A DNA stretch of 64,000 bases from Octopus sinensis. Its lineage: Eukaryota. Position 1 is the stretch's first letter; the number at the start of each line of letters is the position of its first letter. This document shows positions 8,750 through 30,133 of this stretch, piece after piece. The DNA is taken from contig NC_043014.1 in the NCBI RefSeq assembly GCF_006345805.1, forward strand, positions 992,001-1,056,000. Direction: 5' to 3'. A program made the translations under genes and the position numbers. The notes under the pieces are model-generated. The model worked only from the letters and a program-made list of their open reading frames with translations. It did not search any database and was not told the origin of the DNA.

Positions 8750-8793
8750 CTATATATATATATACACATATATACACACATATATACGTACAT

Positions 8794-8824
<31 letters not shown>

Positions 8825-8906: not shown

Positions 8907-10347
8907 TGTTGAGAAGTCATGGATGTATATTTTGTAGAGGTAAGTTCTCGGGATTTCCATACGTGACCCTCCTACCGACTGTATCGATTGACTTTATTGT
9001 TGATGAAATTTCTCTATTTCAAGTTATTGATCACAATTATTGCTAAATTTCCGATCTAATTAGGCATCGTGACAGGTTTAAACAGCAAAATTTGTTTTTT
9101 AAGTGGCTGAGCTCGAATTTGTTTTCCTTGTTTAACAATTTGGTCGAGTAATTAAAAAACAGATCGCTTTGTGGTTTCGGGTTCAATCCCTCTCAACCAG
9201 CTTGGGCAAATGTTTTCCACTACAGCTTCGGGATGACTCATGTATGTATGTGAGTGAATTTGATAAACGGAAACTGTGTGGAATCCCAACGCATATGTGT
9301 GTGTGTGTGTGTGTGTGTGTGTCTACCGCACCACTTGGCAATCGGTGTTGGTTTGTTTATGTCCCTATAACTTAGCAGTTCGGCAAAAAGATATCCATGA
9401 AATTAGTACTAAAATTAGTAAAAAAGTACTGACGTCAATTTGTTCTACTAAACTTTCCAAGGTCATGCCCCAACATGGCCGCAGTCCAATGACTAAAAAA
9501 TACTAAAGAGTAAAGTTACACCCGCCCCTCTTTGAAGATGAGAGTTTATCTAAAAGAACGAATGATTTCCAGAGGTTTTCATGGTCAAATTCGTTCAAAA
9601 CACATCAAAGAACATAGAAAGAAAAAACACAAAACAAAAAAGAAACGTAAATTTCGTCTTTAAAGTGAGGCGGGTAAAGAAAAATAGAAAAAAAAAGGAA
9701 CAATGTCTTCGAGAATGCAACAATCGTTGTTGCTTCTCCCACCAACCATTTCTTTCGTTCCATCATCATCATGTCCTCATCCAGCTCGCAGCTACTCCCT
9801 CTATGTACGGCCTTCATAGCCAATAAAATGAAATGAAATAGTCAAAATTTACTATTTTTTCCCACTGATGGAATTACAGCAAGTTGGTCACCTAAGTCTT
9901 TTATGACGTCATCGTCTTCGTTGCTAATTTTCTGAAGCTCAGAATCCACTGTTTCTCTCTTTTGCTGGATTTGGTGACATTTTTCATATCTTCTGGCTAA
10001 ATTTGAAGAAGAGTTGGTCCAAAAGAGAACCGCAAAAGACTTTTTACTGGACTTGGGCGGATTCTGTCAACCACAACATATCGGGTTCTGCTTCACAAGA
10101 AATATCGATCTCAGGACAATGCTTTTCTACGGACTACAGTTTTCGATAGCTTTTTCAGAAGAATGGTGCCGTCGACTTTGAAAAACCATTTTGGTTGGGA
10201 CTTAAGAGATTTTTATTTTCAAGAAGTCACATCACTTTCATTTCATCTCATCTTCCTCTCAAATATTTTACTCGTGTGAGAAGTAAGGGGGAGAGTATCG
10301 GTGGTATACATACACACACACATACATACATACATACATACACACAC

Positions 10348-10380
<33 letters not shown>

Positions 10381-10833
10381 CATACACATACATACATATA
10401 CATACATCTATACGTACATACATACATATACATACATACATACATACACACACATACATATACATACATACATACATACACACACATACATATACATACA
10501 TACATACATACACACACATACATATACATACATACATATACATACATATATACATACATACATGCATACATACACACACATACATATACATACATATATA
10601 CATACATACATACACACACATACATATACATACATATATACATACATACATGCATACATACACACACATACATATACATACATACATACATACACACACA
10701 TACATATACATACATATACATACATACATAGACGCATACATACACACACACATACACACATATATATACACACACATATACATACGCACGCCTTCACTGT
10801 GATTGTAGGTTTGTACATGAATGTATGCCTGTG

Positions 10834-10896: not shown

Positions 10897-11007
10897 GTAT
10901 TCGCATGTAAATAGAAAGACAGAGAGGTTAGAGAAGACAGAGGGAAAGAAAGGAAGAATAGGGTGGGAGAGAGGGGGGAGAGAGGTGGTAGAGAGGAGGA
11001 GGAGGAA

Positions 11008-11190
11008 GGAGGGGTGGTAGAGAGGAGGAGGAGGAGGGATGGGTGGTAGAGAGGAGGAAGGGATGGGTGGTAGAGAGGAGGGAGGGATGGGTGGTAGAGA
11101 GGAGGGAGGGATGGGTGGTAGAGAGGAGGGAGGATGGGTGGTAGAGAGGAGGGAGGGATGGGTGGTAGAGAGGAGGGAGGAAGGGGTGGT
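11008..11190. repeat. Purine-rich minisatellite, unit about 24 bp
   Basis: (gggatgggtggtagagaggaggga)n. Confidence 0.88.
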
Positions 11191-11371
11191 AGGGCGATCA
11201 AGATGTCGCCGCCATATTTAATGTGTCAATGTTTAATGGTTTACTTAAACTTCCGTCTTGTTTGATGAATGAACATCACACCTTCACCTTTGAGACTTCG
11301 TCGCTTTTTTTTTACTAATTAATGACGCGTATGTTGGTATTTGTGTATGTCAGTGTGTGTAATATATATAT

Positions 11372-11489: not shown

Positions 11490-11659
11490 TATAAAATATT
11501 ATTAGAGACAAAACCACTATTTTGCAAAACAAACAAGAAAGACTTAATCAATACATAAAATTTAATAAATAGTCAAATTTATTAAAATTTTATGTATTGA
11601 TTAAGTCTTTCCTTGTTTGTTTTGCAAAATAGTGGTTTTGTCTCTAATAATATTTTATA
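11490..11659. repeat. Foldback inverted repeat (about 80-bp arms, 6-nt loop)
   Basis: 11490-11570 versus 11577-11659, nearly identical; loop agtcaa. Confidence 0.92.
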
Positions 11660-11714
11660 TATATATATATATATATATACTTTATTTAAAGCATGTTTAC
11701 TCCGGTATATATAC

Positions 11715-11785
<71 letters not shown>

Positions 11786-11898
11786 TATATATATATTTGC
11801 ACTCATACATTTATATACATGTGTATATATGCATACATGTGTGTGTGTGTGTATATATTATATAATATATATATAATATATATAGATATGTATGTATG

Positions 11899-11955
<57 letters not shown>

Positions 11956-12744
11956 CATATATATACATATATTTATCATATATGCATGTGTATGTATATA
12001 TATGAGTGTGTGTGTGTGTGTGTATATATGATCAAACTGATCAACTCCATAAGCCAGATATCAATTTACCCACACTGTCTCATGTCTGATGTTATTATAA
12101 ATCTACGTTTTTTTTTTCCGTCGACACTTTGTAAAGACACATAGCGTTAACCCCACCCTGGGACCCCTATAACTGGCATAGTGCAGGGTGACCCTATGTT
12201 TCCCCTGTTGTGATCCCATTTCCCTTATCTGACCATGAACTTACAACTGATATTTAAGCAGGGGACCCAGTATCAACAAGTCTATCGTCCCTTATTCCTT
12301 ATCTAATTTATAACAAGATTGAATGACAGAATTAGCTTAGAAGTAATGTTTAGTCGGGTGCTGGGAGGTGGTGACCCCTAAAATAGGAATTTGGCGGACT
12401 CTAATTAAGGTGGCTAGTGAAGATGTTTGTTGGGCTGAGTACGGCAATAAATTTACATATGAAATTCAGCTCACAGGGATTAGGGGTCGACGCGTTTACA
12501 CCTTGCGACTTGGTTTCAAAAGATGGAAAGTCAGGACACTTTAGATGAAAGCTGTAAAACTGTCTCCTACAGGGAAATGGAAATCGTCTTCCTGTAATTT
12601 TACACAAACGGTTACTCTTTTACTCTTTTACTCTTTTACTTGTTTCAGTCATTTGACTGCGGCCATGCTGGAGCACCGCCTTTAATCGAGCAACTCGACC
12701 CCGGGACTTATTCTTTGTAAGCCCAGTACTTATTCTATCGTTCT

Positions 12745-15434: not shown

Positions 15435-15902
15435 ATGATGGCTACACTGAAAGTCCCGCCTTTGGCTGTTCCAAGTGCCTACCTGAAGAGAGGGCCACAC
15501 CTATCAAGTTTAGACTCTTGCAGTGGATCGGGAGATTTAGCAAATTCAAACAAAAACTTGATTGACGTAAAGCAGACGACAGAAACATTGAAACAAGCCA
15601 ATGGCATTGGATCGTGCCTGGACAATATCGCTTTTGAAATTGAAGACGAAATTTCCAAAATAGAAGCCAGAAACGGTTTTGCTCCTTCTATCAAATCGAA
15701 GCCCAATAATAGTTATTCCGATGCCATCGCATCGACTTCAAAGGACGAGATATGCTTCACCATCACCGGAAGCAATAACAACGAAAGTATAAGTAGCAGT
15801 GGCGACACCCAGCGGAAAGAACCGGACATTTCCACAAATGATTCAACCATTACATCTCGACGGAGTAAAAATGTTCAAATTTTGGATTTTGCAAACAAAA
15901 AG
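15435..15902 (+). CDS. MYORG: GH31 MYORG-like protein, coding exon 1 (156 aa Ser/Asn-rich N-terminal, probably cytosolic, region)
   Basis: Acceptor tttttttcAG at 15381-15382, then ATGATGG at 15435. Open frame MMATLKVPP...DFANKK ends at donor AAG|GTCAGT (intron starts 15903, phase 0), matching the phase-0 acceptor at 28099. The join is inferred from phase compatibility only. Confidence 0.7.
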
Positions 15903-17142
15903 GTCAGTTTTAAAAACTGTTTTTCTTTCGTTAGATATTCCCTAAAATTAAAGCTTAAGATGGGACACAATGAAACAAACTGCATTGAATCGAAACGAAA
16001 GATAAATAAATAATCTTTATGTAATGAAAGAGGGGATGTAAATGTTTGTTGGTTGGTTGGGTGATTTCTGCAGTCGGGTTTCACATCGTATATATATATA
16101 TATAGAGAGATATAACATAAGAGGTGCAAGATAAGTGCATGTACTGGGCTTGGTGACAGTCAATGAGTAAGGGAACGCTATGCACACACAGACACGCGTT
16201 GAGAAAGAACCAGTTGATGACTGGGGTCGATATGAACGACTTACCTCCTCCCCCGAACTTGCTACCCTTATGTCAAAATTTGAAACTAATAATCGTCAGT
16301 AAAGGCGAAAGTCAAGGACCAGACGTCCATCGCAGAAACCACGTTTCCATGGAATTCATGAAAGCCAGTTTTCTTTTTCCGCCTTTTTCAATCCAACGAC
16401 TTTAAACCCAAAGCATTAGAAGCTATTTTTTAGAAGACATATTTATATATTTCTCGATGTTTTTCCTTTGCATTCTAAATGTAAATAAACCTTCTCGCTA
16501 GGAAGATTAAGGGGTTTTATTTGATGGTCGAAATACAGGAGGTTGCTCTTGTGGAATTAACCGCTCTGGGTCACAGAAAATGAGGGGCCCAAATCCTGCA
16601 GACTGCTTTCAGGCGTTTCTTCTATCCAGGGTAATTTTTTTTAAAACCAGTGTCGCATAAGTTAATAGCAATGAGTGAATTCGCTTCGACAACATTGTTA
16701 AGTAAAGAGTTATTTAAATAAAATAAAATTAATTAGATTTTAAAATAATTACAAAGATTTAATTATCTTTCTCTTTGGTTCGGTGCCGTTTTGTTTCACT
16801 CTGCCCACCATCTTAAAATTGTATTCCTTCTTGATACAAGAACTGTCTCCATATTAGATCAATTTGTTATATGCGGATATCAAGTTCTTTGAAAATGGTT
16901 TCCATGTAAAAAAAAGGACCCAAGTTTTAATTTGTTCAAATGTCTGGATTTGTTCCTTACTAAGAAACACTTTCTACAAGACAACATTTTGACTTTTGAT
17001 TTAAAGTTCTCCATTTTGGTGCCATTTAGATATTTCTCATTAAACGTCATAAATTCTGGTTCGGCGAAGACATTTCTTCAGAAATTGCAACAAAAGAGCT
17101 GAAATTCCAATTTTGTAAAGACGGAAACTCAGTCTTTCTGTT

Positions 17143-17212
<70 letters not shown>

Positions 17213-17217
17213 ACCTA

Positions 17218-17436
17218 TTTCTTTATTACCCACAAGGGGCTAAACATAGAGGGGACAGACATAGGTATTAAGTCGATTACATCGACCCCAGTGCATAACT
17301 GGTACTTAATTTATCGACCCCGAAAGGATGAAAGGCAAAGTCGACCTCGGCGGAATTTGAACTCAGAACGTAGCGGCAGACGAAATACCGCTAAGCATTT
17401 CGTCCGGCGCGCTAACGTCTCTGCCAGCTCGCCGCC
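17218..17436 (-). mobile_element. tRNA-derived SINE, family A
   Basis: Near-identical to the copies at 6671-6888 and 45704-45937. Confidence 0.85.
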
Positions 17437-18079
17437 TTTTCTCTATCTATCTATCTATCTATTTATCTACCACCTACCGATTTCTCCTCTCTTTCTCTCC
17501 CTCCTCTTTCTCACTCTGTTCCTATCCATGCAGTTTTATAAAATAGTTTACAAGATCAAGGTTTAATGATTCAATGGAAAAACCTCGCCAGCTGTTTCTA
17601 GAAAATGTAGTGACTCCTTCACCTCCCCCATCGAGATGGTTGGTAGATAGAGAAGTGCAATAGGAGGAGAGAGGGTCGATTATGTCAAGCCCCGGGTAGA
17701 AAGGGTGTGTAGATTACTAGTAAAGAAGAGCAGTGAACGTCATAGTAGCGGTAGATGGAGTACACCAAGTCTGTCGGTTTGTGAACGGGTGACAATGTAT
17801 TTTCTCAGCAGCAACCACAGAATTAGGGGTAAAATCAAGGTTAGGATTTACAATATATAACGGATTAGTCATAGCTTGGATTACAAAAGAGAATTAAGGT
17901 GTTGGCCATTACAAACGTCTTTTATTTATTGACATACACTCACTCACACGGGTAGGTGTGTATATAACACCTTGAACATAATTTCGCCATTAAATACAAA
18001 ACGGGATACTGACCTCTCCTCTTTGATAAACATGTCCTCGCACGTCCTTGCACCTCGTCACCGTCGTCGTCAGCGTCGA

Positions 18080-18121
<42 letters not shown>

Positions 18122-18477
18122 TACAATCGAAAAACAAATACTTAATTTTTTCCTAGAATTGAAGCGAATCTGATAAACAAATAAAAACATAAATAAAAGT
18201 CACTGAAATTAACCCAAGCTTTAATGAGTGCGCACACACGCCCACACACACACACACATACATAATAGAACAACATGCACACGCATACATACACACATAT
18301 ACGCATTTGCATATATGCATACCCCCACCGCACCCCTATGCAAGATGTCACCCCCCCAAACTCTATACAATGTATAGAAAGAGAGTTAACAGTGAAAACG
18401 AGTAGAATATTGCTCCCTAGCTTGAGGTACTCTCTTTATCGATGTACTCTCTACATTAATGTACTCCCTAAATCAGT

Positions 18478-18830
18478 GTGCCCCCTACATCGATGTACCC
18501 TTTTTTTATTTAAGTACCCCCTACATCGATGTACCCTTTTTTATTATTAATGTACCCCCTACATCGGTGTACCCTTTTTTATTAATGTACCCCCTACATC
18601 GATGTACTCTTTTTTTATTTAAGTACCCCCTACATCGATGTACCCTTTTTTATTATTAATGTACCCCCTACATCGGTGTACCCTTTTTTATTAATGTACC
18701 CCCTACATCGATGTACCCTTTTTGTTTATTAATGTACCCCCTACATCGATGTACCCTTTTTTATTAATGTACCCCCTACATCGATGTACCCTTTTTTATT
18801 AATGCCCCCCCCCGTATCGATGTATTCTAT
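18478..18830. repeat. Minisatellite, about 10 units of 35-38 bp
   Basis: Unit gtaccccctacatcgatgtacccttttttattattaat; variants recur in a three-unit order. Confidence 0.92.
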
Positions 18831-21800
18831 ATATCGATATTGATATACTCCATGTTGATATGCTCTACGTTGACGCACTCTTTATCGATGTACTCCCTAC
18901 TTACTGCTGATATACTCCCTAAATCCACGTACTTCCTATATTGGCGTACTCTCGCCTCATGGATATACTCTCAGAAGTGTTTTTTTTATACCTTCATCAA
19001 GCGGGGAAGAGGAAGGATGGAGCCCTTTAGCCTTTTCAGTAAAGAGGGACTGGAAGACAATGAATAAACATTTTTTTTCTTTTTAATGTTTTTAGTGCCA
19101 GAAGGGAAAGCAGGGCCCATGACCCTCTACAAGGCCTTAAGGACCAGTGGGAAGGCGGGAGGACGGAAGGAAGAGATCCTCAAACTGGAAGCTTGGCCTG
19201 AATGCTTACGACAAGGTGGACTCTGCCAAACCTACCCGGGGTGCCATGTGATGATGTTAAACCGGGTGACAAGTGAGCTCTCCACCCGCCACAAGTAGGC
19301 TTGGAAAGATTCCAACAAATACCACAAGACACTTTGGTCCCTCATTCTTACACTTCTACCAACCCCCGTCCTCCATCGATACTTTTCCTTTTCTTCAATA
19401 ACCATCCAAAGAATTATTCCACTAGGATGTCTTAACCATAGTCTTAGTTTCTTCCACACAGTTGGCCCCTTTTCTCGAGCAGCAACACATCCCCAATCAC
19501 CAGAATCGCCTGTATCTTCTCAGGCGGCACTAAGTTACTTCAGATCTTTGAAGGGGCCGTGCCGTGTCTTCCTGGATTTCCCTCTCTTCGTTTGGGGTTC
19601 GTTTTCGGACAGGATCTAGTGTAAGAATATACTGAGGTGCCATCGGACAAGCTCCACTCTAACATAGGATTCTACACGAAACGCACCCAGAACACGAATG
19701 GTCCCTGCCACAAGGTCTTTACACTGTTTCCGTCTTACCAATTCTTCTCCCAAGACATAACTTTCATTCAAATTTATGATGAAATATACCCACTGTGGGA
19801 CTGAACCCGTTACCATCTGACTGCAAACCAAATCTTAACCACATTACCTTATCCGTAGCCACACCTTCTAGACTGTCGATCTTTTCTGTCTGCAACATCG
19901 ACCCTTCCACCCTTCCACCCCTACACCCCCCCCGTCGCCCTTCCCATCACTTTCTTCTTCTCCAACACAAACCTCCTCCAATTCCTTCTCTACCCCTACC
20001 ACTTTCTCCTCCCCTCCCTCTTCTTCTTCTTCTTCTTCTTCTTCTTCTACCTCTGCTCCCAGCCACTCCACTGTGTCTCCCCCTCCTTCTCTTCTTTATT
20101 CTTTACCTTTCCTTTCTCACACCATCCCTTCCTCCTCCTCCTCCTCCTCCTCCTCTTCCTCCTCTCCTCCTCCTTCCCTCTCCTTTACCCTTCCTCCTCT
20201 TCCTCTCTTATCCCCCTTCCCCTCCAATGTCGTTAGAAGCTTCTTCCTTCAGTTTGGATCGCTTTTGCCAGTAAAACAACATCAAAGCTTCAAACACACA
20301 CTTCTATACACACACACACACGTACGAATATACACACACACACACACATATTTCTATACACACGTACACACAGTTGCATACACCTGCACACACACAGACA
20401 TCACCCTGCACACACACACACACAGATGGCTGCTCTTTCTTCGAGACTAAATTTCTTGGAACATGGCAAATCCTTCTCAACGACGGCCATTGACAGAATT
20501 GGAATTTCCAAAACGTCTACGTCTACCTTGGAGAGAAACATACGAAGGGTTCGGTTCGCCAGTCTATTATTCCCTCTTTCCATATCTGCCCCGACCCCAG
20601 TTGATAAAACTAAACAGCTGACGACTCAGGATCAAATCCCGCCAGTGACTGTAACACCAAAGGTCAGAGTGCTTTCTCTTTTTTTTTTATGTTTTTGTGC
20701 GTTTTTAAAGGTTTATTTTGAGGAAAGGTGGTGGCTGCCACGGTAGGGTACCCGATAATGGGCCAAGAGTTCGTATCCAAGTATTGATATTGCGTTTGTT
20801 TCTGTTTGTTCTGCTCACATGCTCAGTCCACCCAGCCGTAAACAAAAGAGACCACGGGGCAGCGGAGTAATGTCCGTTTCTATAAGCATCAGTCCTGTAC
20901 AGAGACTTACACACACACACACACACACACACACTCAAACTCTCTCATTCTCTCTTACTCTTACATACACACTCACATACGCACACATATAGTGACACAC
21001 GCGCATACACACACATACAGTTATCCCCCCCACACACACACGTTGTTGCTGCTGTTGTAGTTCCTGTTGTTGCTATTGTTTTTATTGTTGTTGTTGTTTA
21101 AACCAAGGTTATTCTAATCTCTGTTGATCTCTCATCCCAATCTTGTATATGGCACGTACCCGTATGTGCCTTGTATATGGCACATACCCGTCTGTGCCTT
21201 GTATGTGGCACGTACCCGGTTGTGGAGTTAGCAAGTTTACTTGGTAACCACGATATTTTAACTTCAATTCCACCGTGTGGCACCTTGAATTTACCAAAGC
21301 TTTGTAAGAGCAATTCGAGACCTGGAAACTGTGAGGAAGCGCTAAGATGGACTGTTTCTTTCCAAGAATGCATATTTTCCTATTCACGACAGTCGGAATG
21401 GTAGGCATAATCCTGGATTTAGGATGTCTTTTAGTGGAGTCCAGTCTGTCGCAATATGGCAGTGGCCAGGTCCCCAGTTTGAGAATTACTTCCTTTCCAC
21501 CCTCTCACATGTCTTGAGGGCCGCAGAAAAGGGGGTATGGTCCTTGTTTTTCTTTCTTTGATCGAGGTTTGTAATACTCACACACACACACACACAGGCG
21601 CGCGCGCACACACACACACACACTCCCGTTGATTTCCATGTATGAGCGTCCAGTTGTTCAATCGACTAAATGATCCGTGAAATTCCTTATAAAACAGTTA
21701 AACAGTCAGCGTTTTTAAAAAATATTTCAGCAATTTATTTACGCGGCATAAATTCAAATGCTCCCTCACCTGTGTTGGTCGTGTACTAGTATTTCGTATT

Positions 21801-22440
21801 TGCCGACGGTGTACAGTCATTCCTTTCTTCAAAGTGCATCTTCTTTGTCCTATGCGTTACATTGTGGCCAGGTCCCCGGTTTGAGGATAACTTCCCTGTC
21901 CCTCACTAGCCTTAGAGTCCATGGAAAAGGGACGCGGTCCCTGTCCTGCCTCCTTTAACTAAAACATGTAATGCACATTTGCATATTAATTAAATTTCAT
22001 GGTGCACAGGCGATGATATTCCTTCCGGTTAATGTCTGCCATCTTGCTTAGTTTGCCACCGAAATATGAATGGGAAATTCGCTTATTGCGGAAGTAATTT
22101 AACATACTAGAGATTTAGGATTAAATTGTTCACAGGTATAATAAGAATGGTCGTGATTAAGCGATTGCAAAACGTTTTAAAGGGATAAATGTCATTTGAC
22201 AAAAAAGTCCGATATTTGATGAAAGAAGGGCCAAACAACAATAAGATGGCGGGAAAAAAATCATCTTTCGATTCAAGATTAGGAATGATCTGGAACTAAT
22301 CTGGGGGTTCGTTGCATCATGCTTGGTTAATTCGATAATTGTGTGTGTGTGTGTATAATTATATTAATCAAACACTTAAACACACTTATCGACTTATTCC
22401 TATTAGTCCTAATATTATTATCATTATTATCATTTTATAT

Positions 22441-22732
22441 ATATTAATAGTTATCGCCATATTAATATGGCAGTCTATAAATATAAGACTAAAGCTGTCG
22501 CTGATTAGCTCCAAGAGGCCATCGCCTCTAGCTAGCTATATGACACACGAACCTGCGTCCATTACAACGCAGGTTCGTGTGTCATATAGCTAGCTAGAGG
22601 CGATGGCCTCTTGGAGCTAATCAGCGATGGCCTCTTGGAGTTAATCAGCGATGGCCTCTTGGAGCTAATCAGCGACAGCTTTAGTCTTATATTTATAGAC
22701 TGCCATATTAGTATGGCGATAACTATTAATAT
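22441..22732. repeat. Foldback inverted repeat with arm-specific 24-bp triplication
   Basis: Left arm 22441-22558, loop ccattaca, right arm 22567-22732 containing three copies of gcgatggcctcttggagctaatca. Confidence 0.93.
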
Positions 22733-23913
22733 CCAGTAACGCTGCCGTAATCTCCTTTAGAGAGACTTAGTAATTTTAATATTTCTATATATATATATAT
22801 TTACGTATGTCAATTCGCGTTGACATTTTCCTCTTTTACGGTGTCTCCTTCTCGTTCTCTTCCTTTCTGAATTTATTTTTCTCTCTCACACACACACACT
22901 CTCTCTCTTACTCTCTCTCACTCTCTCTCTCTCTCTCTTTCACACGCACACACACTTATTTTCTCTTTCTTTCTACCTCTAATAGGCACATATCTTTCCT
23001 TTGTGTCTCTCCCCCTTTAAGCCTTCATCTTTTCTCTCTCCTTCCCCCTCTCACCCTCTCTCTCCCTCTCTTGCTCCAAACTTTCACTTCCAACTCTATC
23101 TACTTTTTCACTCTCACAGAAGTACCTGTGTGTGTGTGTCTCTCTCTCTCCTTTTCTCTCTCTCCCTCTCTCCCTCTCTCTCTCTCTCTCCCTCTCTCTC
23201 TTATAGACACTGTCGGTAATATCCATCTGTAATGTCTCCCTTTTTCCTCTCTTACAGACCCTGTCTCTCCATCCGTAACCTCTCTCCTCTTCCTCTTTAC
23301 CGATTTCCTTTATCTCTCTCACAGTTTTATCTCTGCAAAATGAAATATTCGGATGCCATTAATTCATGTCCGTCCCTCAGGGAATTGTCACCATGCACAA
23401 ATCATCTCGTTTCTCTGTCAAACACAAACACCCCGCCCCCACACACATACTCATTCACACACACACCACACACACACAAACACACACACACACACACACA
23501 CACACTCGCGCGCGCGCGCAAATATAACACTACAATACATGATATGTCTTATCAAAGAGCTTGTACTAATGGCGGACGAGAAGGTAAGCTGAAATTCAAA
23601 TAGTTATGTTGGGTTTTCTTCTTCAATTTTCATTGAAAACACAATTTTTTACATTCATTTCTTTTATGCACCAAGAATTTCTGCGAAATTCTTTCTCAAT
23701 ATTTTTCGATCATTGCGTAATATGACAAATGAGACTGTATGTAATTCTTTGCGTGTCGTCTGCTGCAAAAGAAGCGATTTTCGTTTCCATATTGGTCGTT
23801 GTTATGGTTATGTATTGGTTTGTTGCGCCAAGCACACAACATCATCGTATTTATCATACCATGTCATATTGAATATATTGTTTTTGGATGAGTGTGTGTG
23901 TGTACATGCATAC

Positions 23914-24019
<106 letters not shown>

Positions 24020-24111
24020 GTATATATATACATATATATATATGTATACGTACATATACACATATATATATGTATGTATGTATGTATGTATATATATGTA
24101 TATATTGTATG

Positions 24112-24167
<56 letters not shown>

Positions 24168-24516
24168 CATACGGAGAAAGAGAGATTAATTGAAGGATTG
24201 AGGCATAGATAGAGATATATATTAATGTTTGTTTGGTGTATAGTAATGTATAAAAAAAGACACTCCTTGCAGCGTGTATTACACACACACACATACATAC
24301 ACACACAGACACACACACATACACACACACATACACACACACATACACACACACATACACACACACACACACACACACTCTCTCTCTCTCACACACACAC
24401 ACTCGTACATATGACTGAGTAACATGTTTCTATATATAGTCACGTGCAAACAGGAACACCCTCTCGTCCCTCCGAATATTGACCCAGCGGGACATCCAGG
24501 AATTCACATCTGGGAA

Positions 24517-24570
<54 letters not shown>

Positions 24571-24914
24571 GCGCCAGTACTTGGTTAGTACTCGTTTTCA
24601 GCTGAACACACTGGAACAGCGAAAAATGAAACGCCATGCTCAAGAAGCCAATGTGTTCGGGAATCGAACGCATACTTCACAATAATGAGCTTAACTTAAA
24701 ATTTATGTTACACGCATTCACATAAACACCCCCACCCCCACCCCACACACACGTATACACACACAGACGCATACGCATACATATATATATACATGTGTGT
24801 GTGTATGGTGTCGAAATTGCGATGACATTTGGTTGGCAATTGATGAAGGACAGAGATTTTCTGCTTTTCCTGTAAATTCCTTTGTCGTACCTTTATGCCA
24901 CCATTTTGATTCCA

Positions 24915-24971
<57 letters not shown>

Positions 24972-25384
24972 ATCTATATTGTTGTATATCGGGATGGTAA
25001 TTTTTTTTTACCAAATAAGCACACGCACCGTATAATCGTCCTTCACTCGTCTATTGCTGTTCTTATTGTAACTCGACGCAAGATACATCCTTAACTCCAG
25101 AACGGAGGTCTTCGCATCGTGCTTACATTTCAGGCAATTCCTGCTGGCCAATTGGAACCCACAGGAGGGTAGGGGTCACCGGCGATCGATAGCCAAAGGA
25201 GACAATCCACTTTGTTGACATTGAGTAGTGGAATCCTTTCCTCCTCCATAGTCTAGAGAGGTCACTTACTAGACAGGCCTTAAGCCAATGGGTTTTAGGA
25301 TCTGCTGATACTCCATAAAGTTAAACCCTTTATGGACGTGAAGCCTGAGGAGGTAGTCCCATAAACCGGCCTTATCTAACTTTA

Positions 25385-25448
<64 letters not shown>

Positions 25449-25707
25449 AGTGTGTGTCAGTGTCTATGTAGAATATGAGGAGATTAGTTCACTGGTGATC
25501 TAAACGAATAGGTACGCTGCGTGAGTGCTGTAATTGGTCATCCGTTGGGTTCCAAGTTGAAAACATAGATGACACCCATACACATAGACACACGTATGTA
25601 TATTCTTTGAATGTTTTAATGTGTTAATGTCATTTTGCGCAAAGGTTACACATTTACATATCATTAAATAATAATGAGTGTACTCTGCCAATTATATTAT
25701 ATTATAT

Positions 25708-25788
<81 letters not shown>

Positions 25789-26463
25789 TACATACACATA
25801 CATACATACGTGTGTATGTGTATGTATAAACGTTTATATATGTTCGTCTGTCCTCCCGCTCGGTCTGTTAAGATTTTCCATTTCTCTTTCGCGCCAGCCT
25901 ACTACGTTCGTCTGATAGTCGAAAGACCCTTTCTCTTATTTATCTATTTATGTTGTAATTGTACAATTATTTTCTTCTTGTTGTATAACCGAAAGGCGTT
26001 CGTCTCTTGTATGTGTATCATTTTAGCTTTCTTGTTCTTGTTTTCGTTCTTCTATACATTCGTTTGCTTTTCATAAAAGTTTAATCCCTTTAGCTTAACG
26101 CTCTGGCACTTGCCGGATTCGAGCGGTCTCAACGATAAATAAGTGCGAAACCGCTAGGGCTTCCGAACTCTGGCTAATGAGGAAATCTGCTGTGAATGGT
26201 CCGTGTGTCATGTTTTTGTCTAGTTTTTCGTTTGTTATGTTATCGTCTATCTTTGCGTATGTTGTTTTTTTCGTGTTCTTTCTGTCCTACCCTTGATATA
26301 TATATATATATATATATATCCGTAAATATAAGAGAGTTAACGTTAAATAGGTTAACTCTAGTGCTAGAAATAGCTCCTCCGGTATAATCGCCGACGATAC
26401 CTCCACATAGAAATAGCACTACCCTCAACGTAAGGAAAGTGAAAAACAACTAAAAAGTAGATT

Positions 26464-26542
26464 AATGTTGTACAATTGTTTCTTTATCAATATAATAAGC
26501 AAATTATACTCACATATATATCTATAAATCATCAGCAACATT
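26464..26542 (-). ncRNA. Mirror copy of the hammerhead motif (left arm of foldback)
   Basis: Reverse complement of 26555-26633 with one mismatch, located in the stem II loop. Confidence 0.75.
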
Positions 26543-26554
26543 GCATCAATGACA

Positions 26555-26633
26555 AATGTTGCTGATGATTTATAGATATATATGTGAGTATAATTTGCGT
26601 ATTATATTGATAAAGAAACAATTGTACAACATT
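26555..26633 (+). ncRNA. Minimal type-I hammerhead ribozyme motif (Penelope-like class), sense within the GH31 intron
   Basis: Stem I AATGTTG/CAACATT, CTGATGA (26562-26568), stem II TTTAT...ATAAA, GAAA (26615-26618), palindromic stem III ACAATTGT, GTA triplet (26624-26626). Confidence 0.78.
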
Positions 26634-27402
26634 AATCTACTTTTTAGTTGTTTTTCACTTTCCTTACGTTGAGGGTAGTGCTATTTCTATGTGGAGGTAT
26701 CGTCGGCGATTATACCGGAGGAGCTATTTCTAGCACTAGAGTTAACCTATTTAACGTTAACTCTCTTATATTTACGGATATATATATATATATATATGCA
26801 AATATGTGTATGGATGCATGTATGAACCCATGTAGTTCTGTTACTTTTGATCCGGTGGTTAATCTACGGGTTCTTCTCGTGGTGGATTCAACGTTTTGAC
26901 AATATCTGATGGCTTTCAGTTTGGAATGACGTCTAAAGCCGGATGCTCTTCCGAATGTCCTGGATGCTTTTTTTGTTTTGTGGCACCAGCACCAATGTGG
27001 TTGTCTTGTGAGTTGACCGAAAGGCTGGGTAGGCGACAGGGTGGTCACTTTAAGTGAAGTGTTGAGAGGTTAAAGTATGATGGTGGTGGGGACACCAGGA
27101 ACAGGTTTATTTTATGTGGAGGAGATTCCTGGCCACTTCACCTTTTATATGGGTGAGATTGGAATGGTGTCCAGAGGAGAGGTAAATATGGGCGTGGCGG
27201 GGTGTGCAGTCTCAAGGTCACATGTTCAGCAAGCGAATAAAAGAGAGCATGGGTGCGGAGGAGGATGCTGGGAAGTTTGCTCGATCGTGATGGGAGGATG
27301 AGAGTTGGATATAAATATGAGGTGGCAGGGGTCAGATGTTTGAATAGGATGAATGTAGGATGGACGTGGTGGACGAGGACGTGAGGATGTGAACAGGAAT
27401 GA

Positions 27403-27748
27403 TGTGGCACCTTGGGCAAGTGTCTTCTGCTATAGCCCGGGCCGACCAAAGCCTTGTGAGTGGATTTGGTAGACGGAAACTGAAAGAAGCCCGTCGTATA
27501 TATGTATATATATATGTATGTGTGTGTGTGTGTGTTTGTGTGTCTGTGTTTGTCCCCCTAGCATTGCTTGACAACCGATGCTGGTGTGTTTACGTCCCCG
27601 TCACTTAGCGGTTCGGCAAAAGAGACCGATAGAATAAGTACTGAGCTTGTAAAGAATAAGTCCCGGGGTCGATTTGCTCAACTAAAAGGTGGTGCTCCAG
27701 CATGGCCGCTGTCAAATGACTGAAACAAGTAAAAGAGTAAAGAGTAAA
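27403..27748 (+). mobile_element. tRNA-derived SINE, family B
   Basis: Same body and tail as 5010-5442, in the opposite orientation. Confidence 0.82.
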
Positions 27749-27780
27749 TGAATAAGAATGAGGGATAGATGTTGAGAGAA

Positions 27781-27813
<33 letters not shown>

Positions 27814-28099
27814 TGAGTGAGTGAAGGTCTTCTGTATTGCAATCATGCTGGACCTCCGCCCCTCCCCCCTCCCATGCTTTCTGCTCACTGTTAACACAAT
27901 GTCTGACTCCTATTTTAATCGAGTCAACAGATATTTATTTGAAAATGCACTTAAAATATAAATATTGTACTTGCTTTAAATAGGTTTTATTTCCAAGAAA
28001 AATCACCCCCCCCTCTACGTCTTTGATATTTGTTCCCCTACTTTAGCTCTTTCATTATTCCATAAAAAACTCAGTTTTATTTATTGTTTTTATTTGCAG

Positions 28100-30133
28100 G
28101 AATCACCGAAACAGAGTTACCTGAAGAGGTTCCAGCTTCACTTTATGGTCGCCATCACGTTTCTGTTTATCATCGGAAACCTGAGCGCAGTGTGGCACTT
28201 TCACGAAGAAGAAAGATTGGCCATCAAAATGGGTCGGCGCATATCGTTCGATACGTCCAGTCGTGTTCTTACATTCAAAGATGCTCCCTGGAGTTCGCTG
28301 CAGTTCAAAGGTTATTTGGCAAACAACATTCCAAAAGGATGGCTGCCGCTCGTTTGTTCGGCCGACAAGAAGAACGTATCAAAAATGTGCATGCGTTGGA
28401 AAGGAATTGCCAGAGTGAATTTGGACTACCATCAAGTGGGGTCTCTGTCCTGTTTCAACGTGAAATGGGATGCTGACAACCAGAACGAAGTTCTTAGAGA
28501 TTGTTACATCAGTAACCTTGATTGGTTTGGGTCTTCAAACACAGGAGATTTCCAATGGCCCCTTCAAAATGTCAGCTATTCCCATTCTCCCAATTATACT
28601 TTCAATGACGTTAACACATTCGGTCATCTGTCGGAACATTTTTGGCTGTCGTCAAATGGTATTGCTATCCTCTTGAACGAATCCACACCTTTTCACGTAT
28701 CTTGGAAGAAAACCAAACTGATGGAGATGTGTATTAACTCCAAATCGAATTCGATATCTGCAACTGAAAACCAGATGCTTGGTTCTTCAAACAAGATAAC
28801 TGAGAAACCAAACCCGATTCTTCGCTACCGAATATGTTACGGTAGAAATATTATGGACACTTATTCTACTGTCAGGAAGTATTTCTCGAGAAATTCTACC
28901 AAAAAGTGGCCCAATGTGAAAATGTTTGAACATCCACATTGGATCGCAAAGGATGCTGGGAACGAATTAGCATCGATGTCGACTGTCGTTGATCTGGCGA
29001 GAGAATTGACCAAAAGGAATTTATCCTGTTCTACAATGGAAGTGTTTGGGAAATGGGAGTCGGAATATGGTAATTTAGAATTTAATGAGATTCACTTTGG
29101 AAATATTTCTAATTTGATGAAATTCATGGATCAGTCATGTGACCTAATGCTGCCAATTAGACCATATATTCACCATAATTCGCAAAGATTTAGCGAAGGA
29201 ATTGAGAAGAACTATTTTATTATGGACGCAGGTGGTCGTGTTCCGGGACTGGTGCATTGGAGCCACGGGGTAGGGGCCATGCTAGATGCTTCATACACCC
29301 CAGCTGTCGACTGGTTTATGCAAAAACTAAAACAACTCCAACTCGATAGTCGAATCAGTTCCTTTCATTTTACATACGATGGCAACATGTCCCTTCCTTT
29401 CCAACCTCACTTCAAGAAAGGATTTCATTCCGGAGATTTGAATCAACGTTTCTCAGAGATTATGGGAGCGTTCAGTGACAAAGTGGTCGTTGATCACGTG
29501 TCTCACTCTCAAAATTCTTCAGTGTTTGTCGCAGTTCAGAGCGTCATCGTCTCAAATGATACTTCGGTGTGTTTTACAAATCTGATTGAGAAATCCTTTG
29601 TGTTGGGTATTTTAGGATACCCTTACATAATGTCGGACGGGATATCGTTTGGCGACGGAACGTTTGCAAACAAAATTCCGAACGAAATAGTCTATCAACG
29701 ATGGCTTCAGGCTTCTATATTCCTCCCCGCCATTCGGTTTTCTGTGACCCCTTGGTCTTATTCTGAATCTGTTGTAGAAAACATTAAAAAATTGCTTGCT
29801 TTTAGACAAAAGATTGTGATCCCGCATTTAATGGGATTAAAAAATGATACCCTTGCTGGGGTACCTTTTATTCGACCCATTTGGTGGTCTTACCCAAACG
29901 ATTCCGATTCACTCGCAATAAAGGATCAATTTTTAGTGGGTGACTCTATATTGGTGGCGCCGTTGTTCTGCGACCAACCGTCACACAGGAACATATATAT
30001 CCCAGCAGGCATCTGGGAAGACGTTAATAAGAAGAAAGTGGTTGACGGTCCTATGTGGTTAGTGAATTATACCATCAGTATCACAGAAGTTCCCTATTTC
30101 AATAGAATGCCACAACACAAAAAAGTCGGTTGA
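28100..30133 (+). CDS. MYORG: GH31 MYORG/KIAA1161-like glycosidase-fold protein, large coding exon 2 (TM helix plus luminal GH31 domain, 677 aa plus stop)
   Basis: Acceptor tatttgcAG|GAA at 28098-28099. Hydrophobic segment FMVAITFLFIIGNLSAVW. MYORG-like blocks recognised from memory: FWLSSNGIAILLNESTPFHVSW, GLVHWSHGVGAMLD, LGYPYIMSD, RWLQASIFLPAIRFSVTPW, PFIRPIWW, DQFLVGDSILVAP, IYIPAGIW. AATAAA at 30226-30231. May be a paralog rather than the ortholog. Confidence 0.92.
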   Translation, partial: ESPKQSYLKRFQLHFMVAITFLFIIGNLSAVWHFHEEERLAIKMGRRISFDTSSRVLTFKDAPWSSLQFKGYLANNIPKGWLPLVCSADKKNVSKMCMRWKGIARVNLDYHQVGSLSCFNVKWDADNQNEVLRDCYISNLDWFGSSNTGDFQWPLQNVSYSHSPNYTFNDVNTFGHLSEHFWLSSNGIAILLNESTPFHVSWKKTKLMEMCINSKSNSISATENQMLGSSNKITEKPNPILRYRICYGRNIMDTYSTVRKYFSRNSTKKWPNVKMFEHPHWIAKDAGNELASMSTVVDLARELTKRNLSCSTMEVFGKWESEYGNLEFNEIHFGNISNLMKFMDQSCDLMLPIRPYIHHNSQRFSEGIEKNYFIMDAGGRVPGLVHWSHGVGAMLDASYTPAVDWFMQKLKQLQLDSRISSFHFTYDGNMSLPFQPHFKKGFHSGDLNQRFSEIMGAFSDKVVVDHVSHSQNSSVFVAVQSVIVSNDTSVCFTNLIEKSFVLGILGYPYIMSDGISFGDGTFANKIPNEIVYQRWLQASIFLPAIRFSVTPWSYSESVVENIKKLLAFRQKIVIPHLMGLKNDTLAGVPFIRPIWWSYPNDSDSLAIKDQFLVGDSILVAPLFCDQPSHRNIYIPAGIWEDVNKKKVVDGPMWLVNYTISITEVPYFNRMPQHKKVG

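What the first reader, a model, noticed from the sequence alone, without database searches (positions are those of the whole stretch)
29045..29542. MYORG-like GH31 protein appears to be a pseudo-glycosidase (both catalytic Asp lost)
Ungapped comparison with human MYORG, recalled from memory. The nucleophile motif SFKFDAGEVSYLP reads SFHFTYDGNMSLP (Asp to Thr, codon 29372-29374). The acid/base motif CFFRLVDRDS reads VFVAVQSVIV (Asp to Ser at 29540-29542, and Arg to Ala). Substrate-contacting LEIDD reads MEVFG (29045-29050) and WSTW reads WIAK. The ORF is nonetheless intact over 677 codons and retains the structural motifs, which suggests selection for a non-catalytic role such as lectin, scaffold or ER chaperone.
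Basis: partly seen in the sequence, partly recalled or inferred. Interest (0 to 1): 0.74.

Follow-up and report, generated by a model that had tools for sequence, protein, structure and literature searches.

The report
Catalytically dead MYORG-like octopus membrane protein
An octopus gene encodes an intact, evolutionarily conserved membrane protein that keeps the fold of the sugar-cleaving enzyme MYORG but has lost almost every active-site residue; it belongs to an old mollusc-wide branch of such "dead enzymes" that databases still label as glycosidases.

Summary
The gene has two coding exons (15435-15902 and 28100-30133) and encodes an 833-aa type II membrane protein. Its luminal part is a complete GH31 fold of the MYORG type (AF2 pLDDT 92; best solved match is human MYORG, TM 0.84). 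Of the ten residues that form the human MYORG active site, nine are replaced. These include the nucleophile (D463 to Thr, 29372-4) and the acid/base (D520 to Ser, 29540-2). Only the +1-subsite Asp is kept.

It is not a decaying gene:
- Octopus bimaculoides, Argonauta and two further cephalopod-type sequences carry the same losses.
- dN/dS is 0.06-0.19 (NG86).

It is also not the MYORG orthologue. It nests (NJ bootstrap 83 and 97) inside a clade made only of degenerate MYORG-like proteins, whose named members are all molluscs. Bivalves and gastropods have these alongside a canonical MYORG. The clade has long, motif-bearing cytosolic tails that canonical MYORG lacks.

The pseudo-glycosidase reading is therefore supported. 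A lectin role using the old pocket is disfavoured. A scaffold or ancillary-subunit role is my inference only. I could not determine whether cephalopods also keep an active MYORG.

Novelty is modest: a new member of a known kind (pseudo-glycosidases), in a branch that appears undescribed.

The parts
15435..15902 (+). Coding exon 1 (156 codons). It encodes the start Met and most of the cytosolic N-terminal tail, which has conserved islands MMxTLxVPxxxVPxxY, LDNIAFEIEDE and RxKxVQI.
   Evidence: tblastn of O. bimaculoides P0001 residues 2-157 gives 94% identity. ATG lies at 15435 and the donor AAG|gtcagt at 15902/15903. Tail alignment is. dN/dS is 0.14.
15903..28099 (+). Intron of 12,197 nt in phase 0, rich in repeats (7,173 nt in O. 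bimaculoides).
   Evidence: Donor gtcagt lies at 15903. A polypyrimidine tract and the acceptor ag lie at 28098-28099.
28100..30133 (+). Coding exon 2 (677 codons plus TGA). It encodes the end of the tail, the signal-anchor helix and the whole GH31 luminal domain.
   Evidence: Pfam PF01055 and PF21365 score above their gathering cut-offs. The AF2 model has pLDDT 92.3. Foldseek finds 7QQF with TM 0.84.
28145..28195 (+). Hydrophobic signal-anchor / transmembrane segment MVAITFLFIIGNLSAVW (type II topology, as in MYORG).
   Evidence: Sequence. It lies within the long helix 3-40 of the AF2 model. Fourteen N-X-S/T sequons lie in exon 2, thirteen of them C-terminal to the segment.
28607..28609 (+). 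D170, equivalent to human D213 (+1 subsite). It is the only active-site residue retained.
28949..28951 (+). K284 at the position of human W321, the Trp that gives galactose specificity.
   Evidence: Argonauta has Arg and the decapodiform-type sequences have Gln.
28973..29815 (+). GH31 TIM-barrel domain (Pfam PF01055).
   Evidence: 58 bits against a cut-off of 23.5. The coordinates are converted from residues 294-574 of the 679-aa ORF.
29045..29050 (+). F316-G317 at the positions of human D353 and D354, the ligands of the 4-OH and 6-OH.
   Evidence: D354 to Gly is shared by 88% of the degenerate clade.
29261..29263 (+). S388 at the position of human W426, the 6-OH ligand and +1 stacking platform.
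29366..29380 (+). The former nucleophile motif H-F-T-Y-D. H423 corresponds to K461, T425 to the nucleophile D463, and D427 to the invariant Gly of the D-A-G-E turn.
   Evidence: The alignment is ungapped. The model's beta-strand 421-424 ends just before T425. D427 is specific to cephalopods; the position is Gly in the sister proteins and in canonical MYORG.
29492..29494 (+). D465 at the position of human R504 (2-OH and +1 ligand), a charge reversal.
   Evidence: Most of the degenerate clade has Glu or Asp here.
29531..29542 (+). The former acid/base segment A-V-Q-S. A478 corresponds to R517 and S481 to the acid/base D520.
29858..30106 (+). GH31 C-terminal beta-sandwich domain (Pfam PF21365).
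   Evidence: 65 bits against a cut-off of 24.4.

Best explanation
The locus is a functional two-exon octopus gene for an 833-aa type II membrane glycoprotein. Its luminal or extracellular part is a complete but catalytically dead GH31 domain of the MYORG subfamily.

Shown:
- The fold is kept.
- The nucleophile, the acid/base and seven of the eight other active-site residues are replaced.
- The same state is present in octopods and in two decapodiform-type sequences.
- Both exons are under purifying selection.
- The protein belongs to a clade of equally degenerate MYORG-like paralogues, whose named members are all molluscs. In bivalves and gastropods these coexist with a canonical MYORG.

Inferred:
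- Catalysis was lost before cephalopods arose, in a duplicate of MYORG.
- The duplicate was kept for a non-enzymatic job. The dead GH31 domain would serve as a folded binding or dimerisation module, because the hydrophobic dimer-interface residues of the MYORG insert region are conservatively kept. The long cytosolic tail, a new feature of the clade, would carry short conserved motifs that recruit partners.
- The most likely mode of action is therefore a membrane scaffold or ancillary subunit. This would work like the dead-glycosidase heavy chain 4F2hc of amino-acid transporters, or like a pseudoenzyme that pairs with its active relative. It is unlikely to be a sugar-cleaving enzyme or a lectin that uses the old pocket.

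My confidence is about 0.85-0.9 for 'conserved pseudo-glycosidase paralogue' and only about 0.3 for the scaffold or ancillary-subunit mechanism.
For: Fold:
- Pfam GH31 domains score above their cut-offs.
- phmmer against human MYORG gives E = 5e-79.
- The AF2 model has pLDDT 92.3 and pTM 0.90, and Foldseek's top hits are 7QQF/7QQH/7QQG with TM 0.84.

Dead site:
- The human active site is defined in PMC9491548.
- The canonical signature DWDDWKDRRD is exact in 134 sequences, whereas octopus reads DKFGSHTDAS.
- A-to-I RNA editing cannot recreate Asp from ACA or AGC.

Maintenance:
- Four cephalopod homologues at 51-93% identity carry the same losses.
- By NG86, dN/dS is 0.19 for exon 2 (Fisher p = 2e-17), 0.14 for exon 1 (p = 3e-6) and 0.06 for the decapodiform-type pair.
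- L003 is an intronless 842-aa ORF on a 3.3-kb contig assembled from a sequencing run, which suggests a transcript.

Paralogy:
- In the NJ tree, built without the active-site columns, the cephalopods group at 100% bootstrap.
- A 25-member degenerate clade has 83% and a 37-member all-degenerate clade has 97%.
- Named members of the 25-member clade are Lottia, Aplysia, Nucella, Sinanodonta, Tegillarca, Dreissena and Ylistrum.
- Canonical copies exist in Lottia, Tegillarca and Sinanodonta, the same species that hold a degenerate copy.

New function:
- Tails of 90-585 aa precede the membrane helix, against 7-45 aa in canonical MYORG.
- The tail contains conserved islands.
- Clade-specific conserved residues lie in the N-terminal domain and the insert region, and Cys491 is invariant where canonical proteins have Gly.
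- Human dimer-interface residues Y397, F402, V406, E407, L419, L422 and I429 read H, F, I, E, V, L and V in octopus. I mapped these by hand from the alignment.
Against: - No activity, binding or localisation data exist for any member of the clade.
A re-formed site using D427, E314 or D513 is therefore not excluded structurally.
- The loop after strand beta-4 (FT[YF]DGN..LPFQPH) is invariant in cephalopods, and a basic residue persists at the K461 position. Part of the old pocket is therefore still constrained, which would fit a remodelled ligand site.
- The scaffold or ancillary-subunit mechanism rests on analogy only. No Pfam domain is found in the tails.
- Tree nodes deeper than the 37-member clade are unresolved (bootstrap below 25). 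The number of independent losses of catalysis is therefore unknown.
- dN/dS of 0.19-0.28 between the two Octopus species is only moderately low.
Confidence: 0.85

Rival explanations
1. It is a glycan-binding protein (lectin or ER quality-control receptor). In this reading it has lost hydrolysis but still binds a carbohydrate in a remodelled version of the old pocket, as chitinase-like lectins do.
For: - The +1-subsite Asp (D213 to D170) is kept in all five cephalopod sequences.
- A basic residue is kept at the K461 position (His or Arg).
- The beta-4 loop is invariant in cephalopods.
- Across the degenerate clade the old pocket shows its own recurring pattern: D353 is often kept, residue 354 is Gly, the two catalytic positions are mostly Thr, Ser or Ala, and residue 504 is mostly acidic.
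- The domain carries many N-glycan sequons, so it faces the secretory pathway.
Against: - W321 and W426 are lost. These are the specificity and stacking Trp residues.
- D353, D354, R504 and R517, which ligate the sugar hydroxyls, are also lost.
- Only 3 of the 10 positions are identical between octopus and the decapodiform-type sequences, no better than the 53% overall identity.
- In canonical MYORG the same positions are 95-100% invariant.
Confidence: 0.15
2. It is still an active glycosidase whose catalytic residues have moved. D427, two residues after the old nucleophile, would act as nucleophile, and another carboxylate (D465, E314 or D513) as acid/base.
For: - D427 is invariant in the five cephalopod sequences.
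- E314 and D513 are also invariant and lie in barrel loops near the old site.
- Pseudoenzymes with migrated catalytic residues are known in general (abstract of review PMC10211241, listed).
Against: - The alignment is ungapped, so D427 occupies the position of the invariant Gly of the D-A-G-E turn and is not a shifted nucleophile.
- D427 is absent (Gly) from all sister proteins of the degenerate clade.
- D465 is Ser in the decapodiform-type sequences, and no carboxylate is conserved in the acid/base segment.
- The residues that hold the sugar in the -1 subsite are nearly all gone.
Confidence: 0.05
3. It is a gene in decay: a recent pseudogene, or an annotation or assembly artefact, whose open frame is accidental.
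For: Both catalytic residues are lost. dN/dS between the two Octopus species is not extremely low (0.19-0.28).
Against: - The open frame of 677 codons has intact splice sites.
- The same architecture is intact in Octopus bimaculoides, Argonauta and two further cephalopod-type sequences.
- Fisher p for fewer nonsynonymous than synonymous changes is 2e-17 and 3e-124.
- The structure prediction is confident.
- 52 structural-core columns are still identical to canonical MYORG.
Confidence: 0.01

Closest known systems
Human MYORG (KIAA1161), a GH31 alpha-galactosidase of the ER and nuclear envelope; PDB 7QQF/7QQG/7QQH; Meek et al. 2022 (PMC9491548)
   Same: - Same fold and domain order: membrane helix, N-terminal beta-sandwich, TIM barrel with insert, and C-terminal beta-sandwich.
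- phmmer E = 5e-79 and Foldseek TM 0.84.
- Type II membrane topology.
- The coding sequence of the luminal domain lies in a single exon.
- 52 structural columns are conserved with the same residue.
- The hydrophobic dimer-interface residues are conservatively kept.
   Different: - Nine of the ten active-site residues are replaced, including both catalytic Asp residues.
- It lies outside the canonical clade.
- The cytosolic tail is about 170 aa with its own conserved motifs, against 7-45 aa in canonical MYORG.
Degenerate MYORG-like proteins of other molluscs: Lottia XP_009053572, Aplysia XP_012937817, Sinanodonta KAL3851704, Tegillarca KAJ8301581, Dreissena XP_052260926, Nucella KAL8596716 and Ylistrum XP_060062906. 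Databases label them variously as 'SITS-binding protein-like', 'myogenesis-regulating glycosidase' or 'hypothetical'.
   Same: - Nearest relatives by profile score (380-560 bits) and in the tree (bootstrap 83).
- All lack the acid/base, and almost all lack the nucleophile.
- They share derived states: D354 to Gly, A464 to Tyr, and Gly to Cys491.
- They have long cytosolic tails.
   Different: - Identity to the octopus protein is only 29-36%.
- Cephalopods have additionally lost D353 and gained D427.
- The bivalve tails are much longer (430-585 aa).
- None has been studied experimentally, as far as I could find.
SITS-binding protein sp105 of the Torpedo electric organ (Jentsch, Garcia and Lodish, Biochem J 1989). 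This is recalled from memory and was not retrievable here.
   Same: NCBI names the scallop member of the degenerate clade after it. This implies that sp105 is that protein's best-named relative. As I recall it, sp105 is a membrane glycoprotein of the GH31/MYORG type with no known enzymatic role.
   Different: Its catalytic residues and its relation to the cephalopod protein were therefore not tested. It is vertebrate, and its function is unknown.
4F2hc (SLC3A2) and rBAT (SLC3A1), heavy chains of heteromeric amino-acid transporters (established knowledge)
   Same: The analogy is one of working mode only. These are type II membrane glycoproteins whose ectodomain has a glycosidase fold (GH13). 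In 4F2hc that domain lacks the catalytic residues and serves as a folded module for trafficking or stabilising a membrane partner.
   Different: They belong to a different glycoside hydrolase family and are not homologous to GH31. Their partner is attached by a conserved disulfide next to the membrane helix. No partner is known for the octopus protein.
Chitinase-like lectins (GH18, e.g. YKL-40) and alpha-Klotho (GH1-like)
   Same: They are glycosidase folds that have lost catalytic carboxylates and are maintained for binding or co-receptor roles.
   Different: Chi-lectins keep the sugar-binding cleft, whereas here the cleft residues are lost. They also belong to different families and have different topologies.

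Membership tests
Glycoside hydrolase family 31 (fold and sequence family) | Matches to the GH31 TIM-barrel and C-terminal domain profiles above the curated thresholds | tested here: met
   PF01055 scores 58.2 bits (cut-off 23.5) and PF21365 scores 65 bits (cut-off 24.4).
Glycoside hydrolase family 31 (fold and sequence family) | Three-dimensional fold superposable on solved GH31 structures | tested here: met
   The AF2 model has pLDDT 92.3. Foldseek gives 7QQF at E = 2e-52 and TM 0.84, followed by bacterial GH31 alpha-galactosidases 8J50-8J53.
Glycoside hydrolase family 31 (as an active retaining alpha-glycosidase) | Catalytic nucleophile Asp at the C-terminal end of barrel strand beta-4 | tested here: not met
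   Thr425 (ACA, 29372-29374) aligns with human D463 without gaps. Model strand 421-424 ends just before it.
Glycoside hydrolase family 31 (as an active retaining alpha-glycosidase) | General acid/base Asp after strand beta-6, with the Arg three residues before it | tested here: not met
   Ser481 aligns with D520 and Ala478 with R517. No carboxylate in this segment is conserved across the cephalopods.
Glycoside hydrolase family 31 (as an active retaining alpha-glycosidase) | Measurable hydrolytic or transglycosylating activity | not testable with these tools
   This needs recombinant protein and assays on 4MU- or pNP-alpha-glycosides and on Gal-alpha1,4-Glc.
MYORG orthologue group (canonical alpha-galactosidase) | Ten-residue active-site signature D213, W321, D353, D354, W426, K461, D463, R504, R517, D520 | tested here: not met
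   The signature DWDDWKDRRD is exact in 134 sequences. Octopus reads DKFGSHTDAS, a match at 1 of 10 positions.
MYORG orthologue group (canonical alpha-galactosidase) | Phylogenetic placement among canonical MYORG sequences | tested here: not met
   It lies in a 37-member clade (bootstrap 97) that contains no canonical sequence. This is an NJ tree only, and the deeper nodes are unresolved.
MYORG orthologue group (canonical alpha-galactosidase) | Type II membrane topology with a single N-terminal signal anchor | tested here: met
   The hydrophobic segment MVAITFLFIIGNLSAVW lies at 28145-28195, inside the long model helix 3-40. Topology is inferred from the sequence and not measured.
Mollusc clade of degenerate MYORG-like proteins | Groups with the named mollusc members to the exclusion of canonical MYORG | tested here: met
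   NJ bootstrap is 83 for the 25-member clade and 97 for the 37-member clade, computed without the active-site columns.
Mollusc clade of degenerate MYORG-like proteins | Shared derived residues: D354 to Gly, A464 to Tyr, and Gly to Cys at octopus position 491 | tested here: met
   G317, Y426 and C491 are present in octopus. Their frequencies in the clade are 88%, 88% and 100%, against 99% Asp, 91% Ala and 99% Gly in canonical sequences.
Mollusc clade of degenerate MYORG-like proteins | Long cytosolic N-terminal tail before the membrane helix | tested here: met
   The tail is 168 aa in octopus and 90-585 aa in the clade, against 7-45 aa in canonical proteins. The detection of the membrane helix was crude.
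Pseudoenzyme (general definition) | The enzyme fold is kept, the catalytic residues are lost, and the gene is maintained by purifying selection | tested here: met
   Searches show the fold and the losses. By NG86, dN/dS is 0.19, 0.14 and 0.06 with Fisher p of 2e-17, 3e-6 and 3e-124.

The most novel reading that the evidence does not exclude
The dead MYORG-like branch is an ancient and so far undescribed family of membrane receptor or scaffold proteins, present across molluscs and possibly across protostomes. In this reading the GH31 domain has been converted into a binding or dimerisation module, joined to a long motif-bearing cytosolic tail. The family would work as an ancillary subunit of a membrane transporter or channel, or as a regulator of active MYORG. 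In cephalopods it may be the only MYORG-family protein left, so that whatever MYORG does in muscle and brain is done there without catalysis.
Probability: 0.2. Interest if true: 0.7.

Novelty: new member of a known kind. Interest (0 to 1): 0.45.

Why it matters
- **Annotation.** Public annotation calls this protein and its relatives 'myogenesis-regulating glycosidase'. This applies to Octopus, Argonauta, Aplysia, Lingula and several insects. At least one published study treats a MYORG-annotated invertebrate protein as an enzyme and an inhibitor target (PMC12027728). About 95 of the 150 best-scoring representative clusters lack canonical catalytic residues. Function transfer from human MYORG therefore looks wrong for a large part of the family.
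- **Human disease gene.** Human MYORG causes primary familial brain calcification when lost, and its natural substrate is still unknown. Old, conserved, non-catalytic paralogues that keep the fold, the dimer interface and a membrane anchor offer a natural experiment on which MYORG functions do not need catalysis.
- **Cephalopod biology.** If no canonical copy exists in cephalopods, this gene would be the sole representative of the subfamily there.

Tried and rejected
1. The first AlphaFold run used only three sequences and gave an unusable model (pLDDT 32.5). The second run, with 104 sequences, succeeded. A 150-sequence alignment was too large to submit.
2. The search for homologous proteins found only the four cephalopod proteins, both with the octopus protein and with the 104-sequence alignment. 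The word index does not reach the 30%-identity relatives. Those came from the representative search.
3. I searched for a catalytically intact cephalopod MYORG and did not settle the question. The Lingula MYORG query returned 889 hits, of which the best 120 were shown. None was named as a cephalopod. Three unnamed mollusc-like canonical candidates (P0226, P0285, P0212) come from sequencing runs other than those holding the cephalopod-type sequences, and their organisms are unknown.
4. Literature searches for GH31 or MYORG pseudoenzymes, GH31 subfamilies and the SITS-binding protein found nothing relevant.
5. No paralogue, RNA family or other gene was found in the 64-kb window.
6. I tested whether the ex-active-site positions evolve faster than the rest of the protein within cephalopods. 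The result was not significant (3/10 identical against 53% overall, p = 0.12), so I make no such claim.
7. I considered a FFAT-like or other known motif in the tail sequence LDNIAFEIEDE. It does not fit the consensus, so I dropped the idea.
8. MAFFT alone misplaced the acid/base column for many sequences. I replaced it with an alignment to an HMM built from canonical sequences.
Full report
**What is in the window.**
The window is AT-rich, microsatellite-laden eukaryotic DNA. The long open frame at the finding begins right after a polypyrimidine tract and an AG acceptor (…tttatttgcag|GAA, exon start 28100). It runs 677 codons to TGA at 30131-30133.

Its closest database relative is the Octopus bimaculoides protein XP-model 'myogenesis-regulating glycosidase isoform X1' (P0001, 831 aa, 93% identity). 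The first 157 residues of that protein map to a second exon at 15435-15902 (94% identity), which ends AAG|gtcagt.

The gene therefore has two coding exons separated by a 12.2-kb phase-0 intron, and it encodes 833 aa. There is no second GH31 gene, RNA family or other long credible ORF in the 64 kb.

**Check of the observation.**
Hits 7QQF and 7QQH score E = 5e-79 over residues 117-670, with no gap in either catalytic motif.

Meek et al. 2022 (PMC9491548) define the human active site as follows:
- D463 is the nucleophile and D520 the acid/base.
- D353, D354, W426, K461, R504 and R517 bind the galactose.
- W321 sets galactose specificity.
- D213, R504 and W426 hold the +1 glucose.

I mapped these ten residues through the alignment, and independently through an HMM built from 80 canonical sequences. 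The octopus residues are:

| Human MYORG | Octopus |
|---|---|
| D213 | D170 |
| W321 | K284 |
| D353 | F316 |
| D354 | G317 |
| W426 | S388 |
| K461 | H423 |
| D463 | T425 |
| R504 | D465 |
| R517 | A478 |
| D520 | S481 |

Only one of the ten residues is kept, and one further change (Lys to His) is conservative. The signature DWDDWKDRRD is exact in 134 of the sequences gathered. The individual positions are 95-100% invariant in 164 canonical proteins. The octopus state is therefore far outside normal variation.

**The fold is intact.**
Both Pfam GH31 domains score well above their thresholds. A model built from a 104-sequence alignment is confident (mean pLDDT 92.3, pTM 0.90). Its best matches among solved structures are the nine full-length human MYORG chains (E about 1e-50 to 1e-52, TM 0.83-0.85), followed by bacterial GH31 alpha-galactosidases.

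In the model, barrel strand beta-4 spans residues 421-424, so Thr425 sits exactly where GH31 enzymes place the nucleophile. The N-terminal helix 3-40 contains the hydrophobic signal anchor (28145-28195). Thirteen N-glycosylation sequons lie beyond it. This matches the type II topology of MYORG.

**It is maintained, not decaying.**
Four homologues were found: Octopus bimaculoides, Argonauta hians and two sequences from sequencing-run assemblies. The last two are 51-53% identical and are probably decapodiform cephalopods.

All four read F-[HR]-F-T-[YF]-D-G at the nucleophile motif and V-F-V-[ATS]-V-x-[SG] at the acid/base motif.

The NG86 counts are:

| Comparison | dN/dS | Differences | Fisher p |
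|---|---|---|---|
| Exon 2, window vs O. bimaculoides | 0.19 | 49.5 nonsynonymous, 63.5 synonymous | 2e-17 |
| Exon 1 (cytosolic tail), same pair | 0.14 | 9 nonsynonymous, 16 synonymous | 3e-6 |
| Two decapodiform-type sequences | 0.06 | 138.5 nonsynonymous, 280.5 synonymous | 3e-124 |

YN00 gives 0.28 and 0.08 for the two exon-2 pairs. Deeper pairs are saturated at synonymous sites.

One of the run-derived contigs carries the whole 842-aa frame without an intron, as a transcript would.

Cephalopod A-to-I recoding cannot restore the catalytic residues. ACA can become only Thr or Ala, and AGC only Ser or Gly.

**It is an old paralogue, not the MYORG orthologue.**
A profile search of 1.8 billion cluster representatives found 436 relatives below E = 1e-30. 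The twenty best non-cephalopod hits (380-560 bits) all lack the acid/base, and nearly all lack the nucleophile. Canonical MYORG sequences score lower, at about 380 bits and below.

Where these best hits carry names, they are molluscs: Lottia, Aplysia, Nucella, Sinanodonta, Tegillarca, Dreissena and Ylistrum. The scallop Ylistrum protein is labelled 'SITS-binding protein-like'.

I built a neighbour-joining tree on 599 profile columns, leaving out the ten active-site columns. Its supports are:
- cephalopods together: 100% bootstrap;
- cephalopods inside a 25-member clade of these degenerate proteins: 83%;
- a 37-member clade with no canonical member: 97%;
- deeper nodes: unresolved.

Canonical MYORG with the full signature is present in bivalves, gastropods and chitons. 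It occurs in the very species that also hold a degenerate copy, namely Lottia, Tegillarca and Sinanodonta. Lingula likewise has both types. The loss of catalysis therefore predates cephalopods and followed a duplication.

Whether cephalopods still have a canonical copy could not be determined with the collections available.

**What the degenerate clade has instead.**
I compared 164 canonical sequences with the 25-member clade.
- 52 columns keep the same conserved residue. This is the structural core, with motifs such as GYP, RWLQ, PWxY, IRPxWW and LVAP.
- The columns that are at least 95% conserved in canonical proteins but variable in the clade are mainly the pocket residues. They include W321, W390, W426, D463, E466, R504, R517, D520, and the Ser and Trp that follow D520.
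- The clade has its own shared derived states. D354 becomes Gly (88%), A464 becomes Tyr (88%), and an invariant Cys (octopus C491) replaces a 99%-conserved Gly.
- The clade also has its own conserved residues. Some lie in the N-terminal beta-sandwich (F50, R55, P78, P83, K101, N120, W202). Others lie in the insert region (F373, D376, G378, V381).

The insert region forms the homodimer interface of human MYORG (Y397, F402, V406, E407, L419, L422, I429; PMC9491548). In octopus these positions read H, F, I, E, V, L and V, as I mapped them by hand. Dimerisation is therefore plausibly kept.

The clade also differs in architecture. Its members have 90-585 residues before the membrane helix, against 7-45 in canonical proteins. 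No Pfam domain is found in these tails. In cephalopods the tail contains three islands that have stayed conserved since octopods and decapodiforms split: MMxTLxVPxxxVPxxY at the N-terminus, LDNI[AG]F[EQ][IL]xDE, and RxKxVQ[IM] next to the membrane.

**How it most likely works.**
Shown: this is a folded, membrane-anchored GH31 domain facing the secretory pathway. It lacks the residues needed for the double-displacement mechanism and for holding galactose. It is under purifying selection in both the luminal domain and the cytosolic tail.

Inferred: it acts non-catalytically. I consider a scaffold or ancillary-subunit role the most likely. The dead domain would act as a dimerisation or protein-binding module, and the tail would recruit cytosolic partners. 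This resembles the way the dead GH13 ectodomain of 4F2hc serves transporter light chains. It also resembles the many pseudoenzymes that pair with their active relatives.

I rate 'conserved pseudo-glycosidase paralogue' at about 0.85-0.9 and the specific scaffold mechanism at about 0.3.

The alternatives are as follows:
- A lectin that uses a remodelled pocket (about 0.15). D170, a basic residue at position 423 and the invariant beta-4 loop speak for it. The loss of both Trp platforms and of all the hydroxyl ligands speaks against it, as does the fact that these positions differ between cephalopod lineages.
- An active enzyme with migrated residues (about 0.05). D427 replaces the invariant Gly of the D-A-G-E turn in an ungapped alignment and is cephalopod-specific. 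No conserved acid/base partner exists.
- A decaying pseudogene, which is effectively excluded.

**Comparison with what is known, and novelty.**
The protein is a member of GH31 by fold and sequence. It fails the defining catalytic features of an active GH31 enzyme and of the MYORG orthologue group.

Pseudo-glycosidases are a known kind; examples are 4F2hc, chitinase-like lectins and Klotho. A MYORG-like membrane protein of unknown function, the Torpedo SITS-binding protein, was cloned in 1989. That is my recollection; I could not retrieve the paper or the sequence.

I found no paper describing catalytically dead MYORG-type proteins. Current annotation and at least one published study treat MYORG-named invertebrate proteins as enzymes.

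I therefore file this as a new member of a known kind. The useful wider point is that about 95 of the 150 best-scoring representative clusters have a degenerate active site. These include a separate insect group that keeps the nucleophile but lacks the acid/base.

Interest is moderate at 0.45. The finding is real and cleanly supported, but it is neither surprising in kind nor linked to a mechanism yet.

Noticed in passing
Related proteins P0110 (Rhodnius), P0111 (Leptopilina), P0117 (Schistocerca), P0102, P0140: A separate insect group, also annotated 'myogenesis-regulating glycosidase', mostly keeps an Asp at the nucleophile position (motif FYLDxGT; Schistocerca has Glu). It lacks R517 and D520 (motif APVFVSLP) and most sugar ligands. 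This looks like a second, differently degenerate MYORG-like lineage.
   Followed up: partly
Representative search, top 150 clusters: About 95 of the 150 best-scoring 50%-identity cluster representatives lack the canonical ten-residue MYORG signature. Lingula has both canonical copies (P0040, P0247, P0278) and a degenerate copy (P0025). Degenerate MYORG-like proteins appear widespread and highly diversified in invertebrates.
   Followed up: partly
window 15435-15902 (exon 1) and homologues P0001-P0003: The cytosolic tail has three short islands conserved between octopods and decapodiform-type sequences: MMxTLxVPxxxVPxxY, LDNI[AG]F[EQ][IL]xDE and RxKxVQ[IM]. An LDNI motif also occurs in the tails of the bivalve proteins P0012 and P0160. 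I recognised no known motif class.
   Followed up: partly
window 29570-29572 (Cys491 of exon 2): A Cys is invariant in all 25 members of the degenerate clade at a position where 99% of canonical MYORG sequences have Gly. It could be a clade-specific disulfide or ligand residue. I did not identify a partner Cys.
   Followed up: no
P0002 (Argonauta hians), tail residues about 115-170: The Argonauta tail carries a long Thr/Asn/Ala low-complexity insertion that the other cephalopods lack.
   Followed up: no
window 18477-18811 (inside the intron): A minisatellite with a 35-bp unit (also scored at periods of 73 and 109 bp), about 9 copies at 88-94% match, with unit TGTACCCCCTACATCGATGTACCCTTTTTTATTAA.
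   Followed up: no
window 8513-8902, 10306-10778, 63564-63869, 11656-12003, 10961-11192: There are long (ATAC)n / (TACA)n microsatellites of 77-120 copies, a (TA)172 tract and a purine-rich 71/95-bp repeat. These create many spurious long ORFs of Tyr/Ile/His or Cys/Met/Tyr/Val.
   Followed up: no
L001 (O. bimaculoides CM046620.1) compared with the window: The single intron is 7.2 kb in O. bimaculoides and 12.2 kb here. Only about 120 nt just upstream of exon 2 align between the two, at 77% identity. O. bimaculoides also lacks three residues (MKF) present here in the region NLMKFMDQSC.
   Followed up: partly
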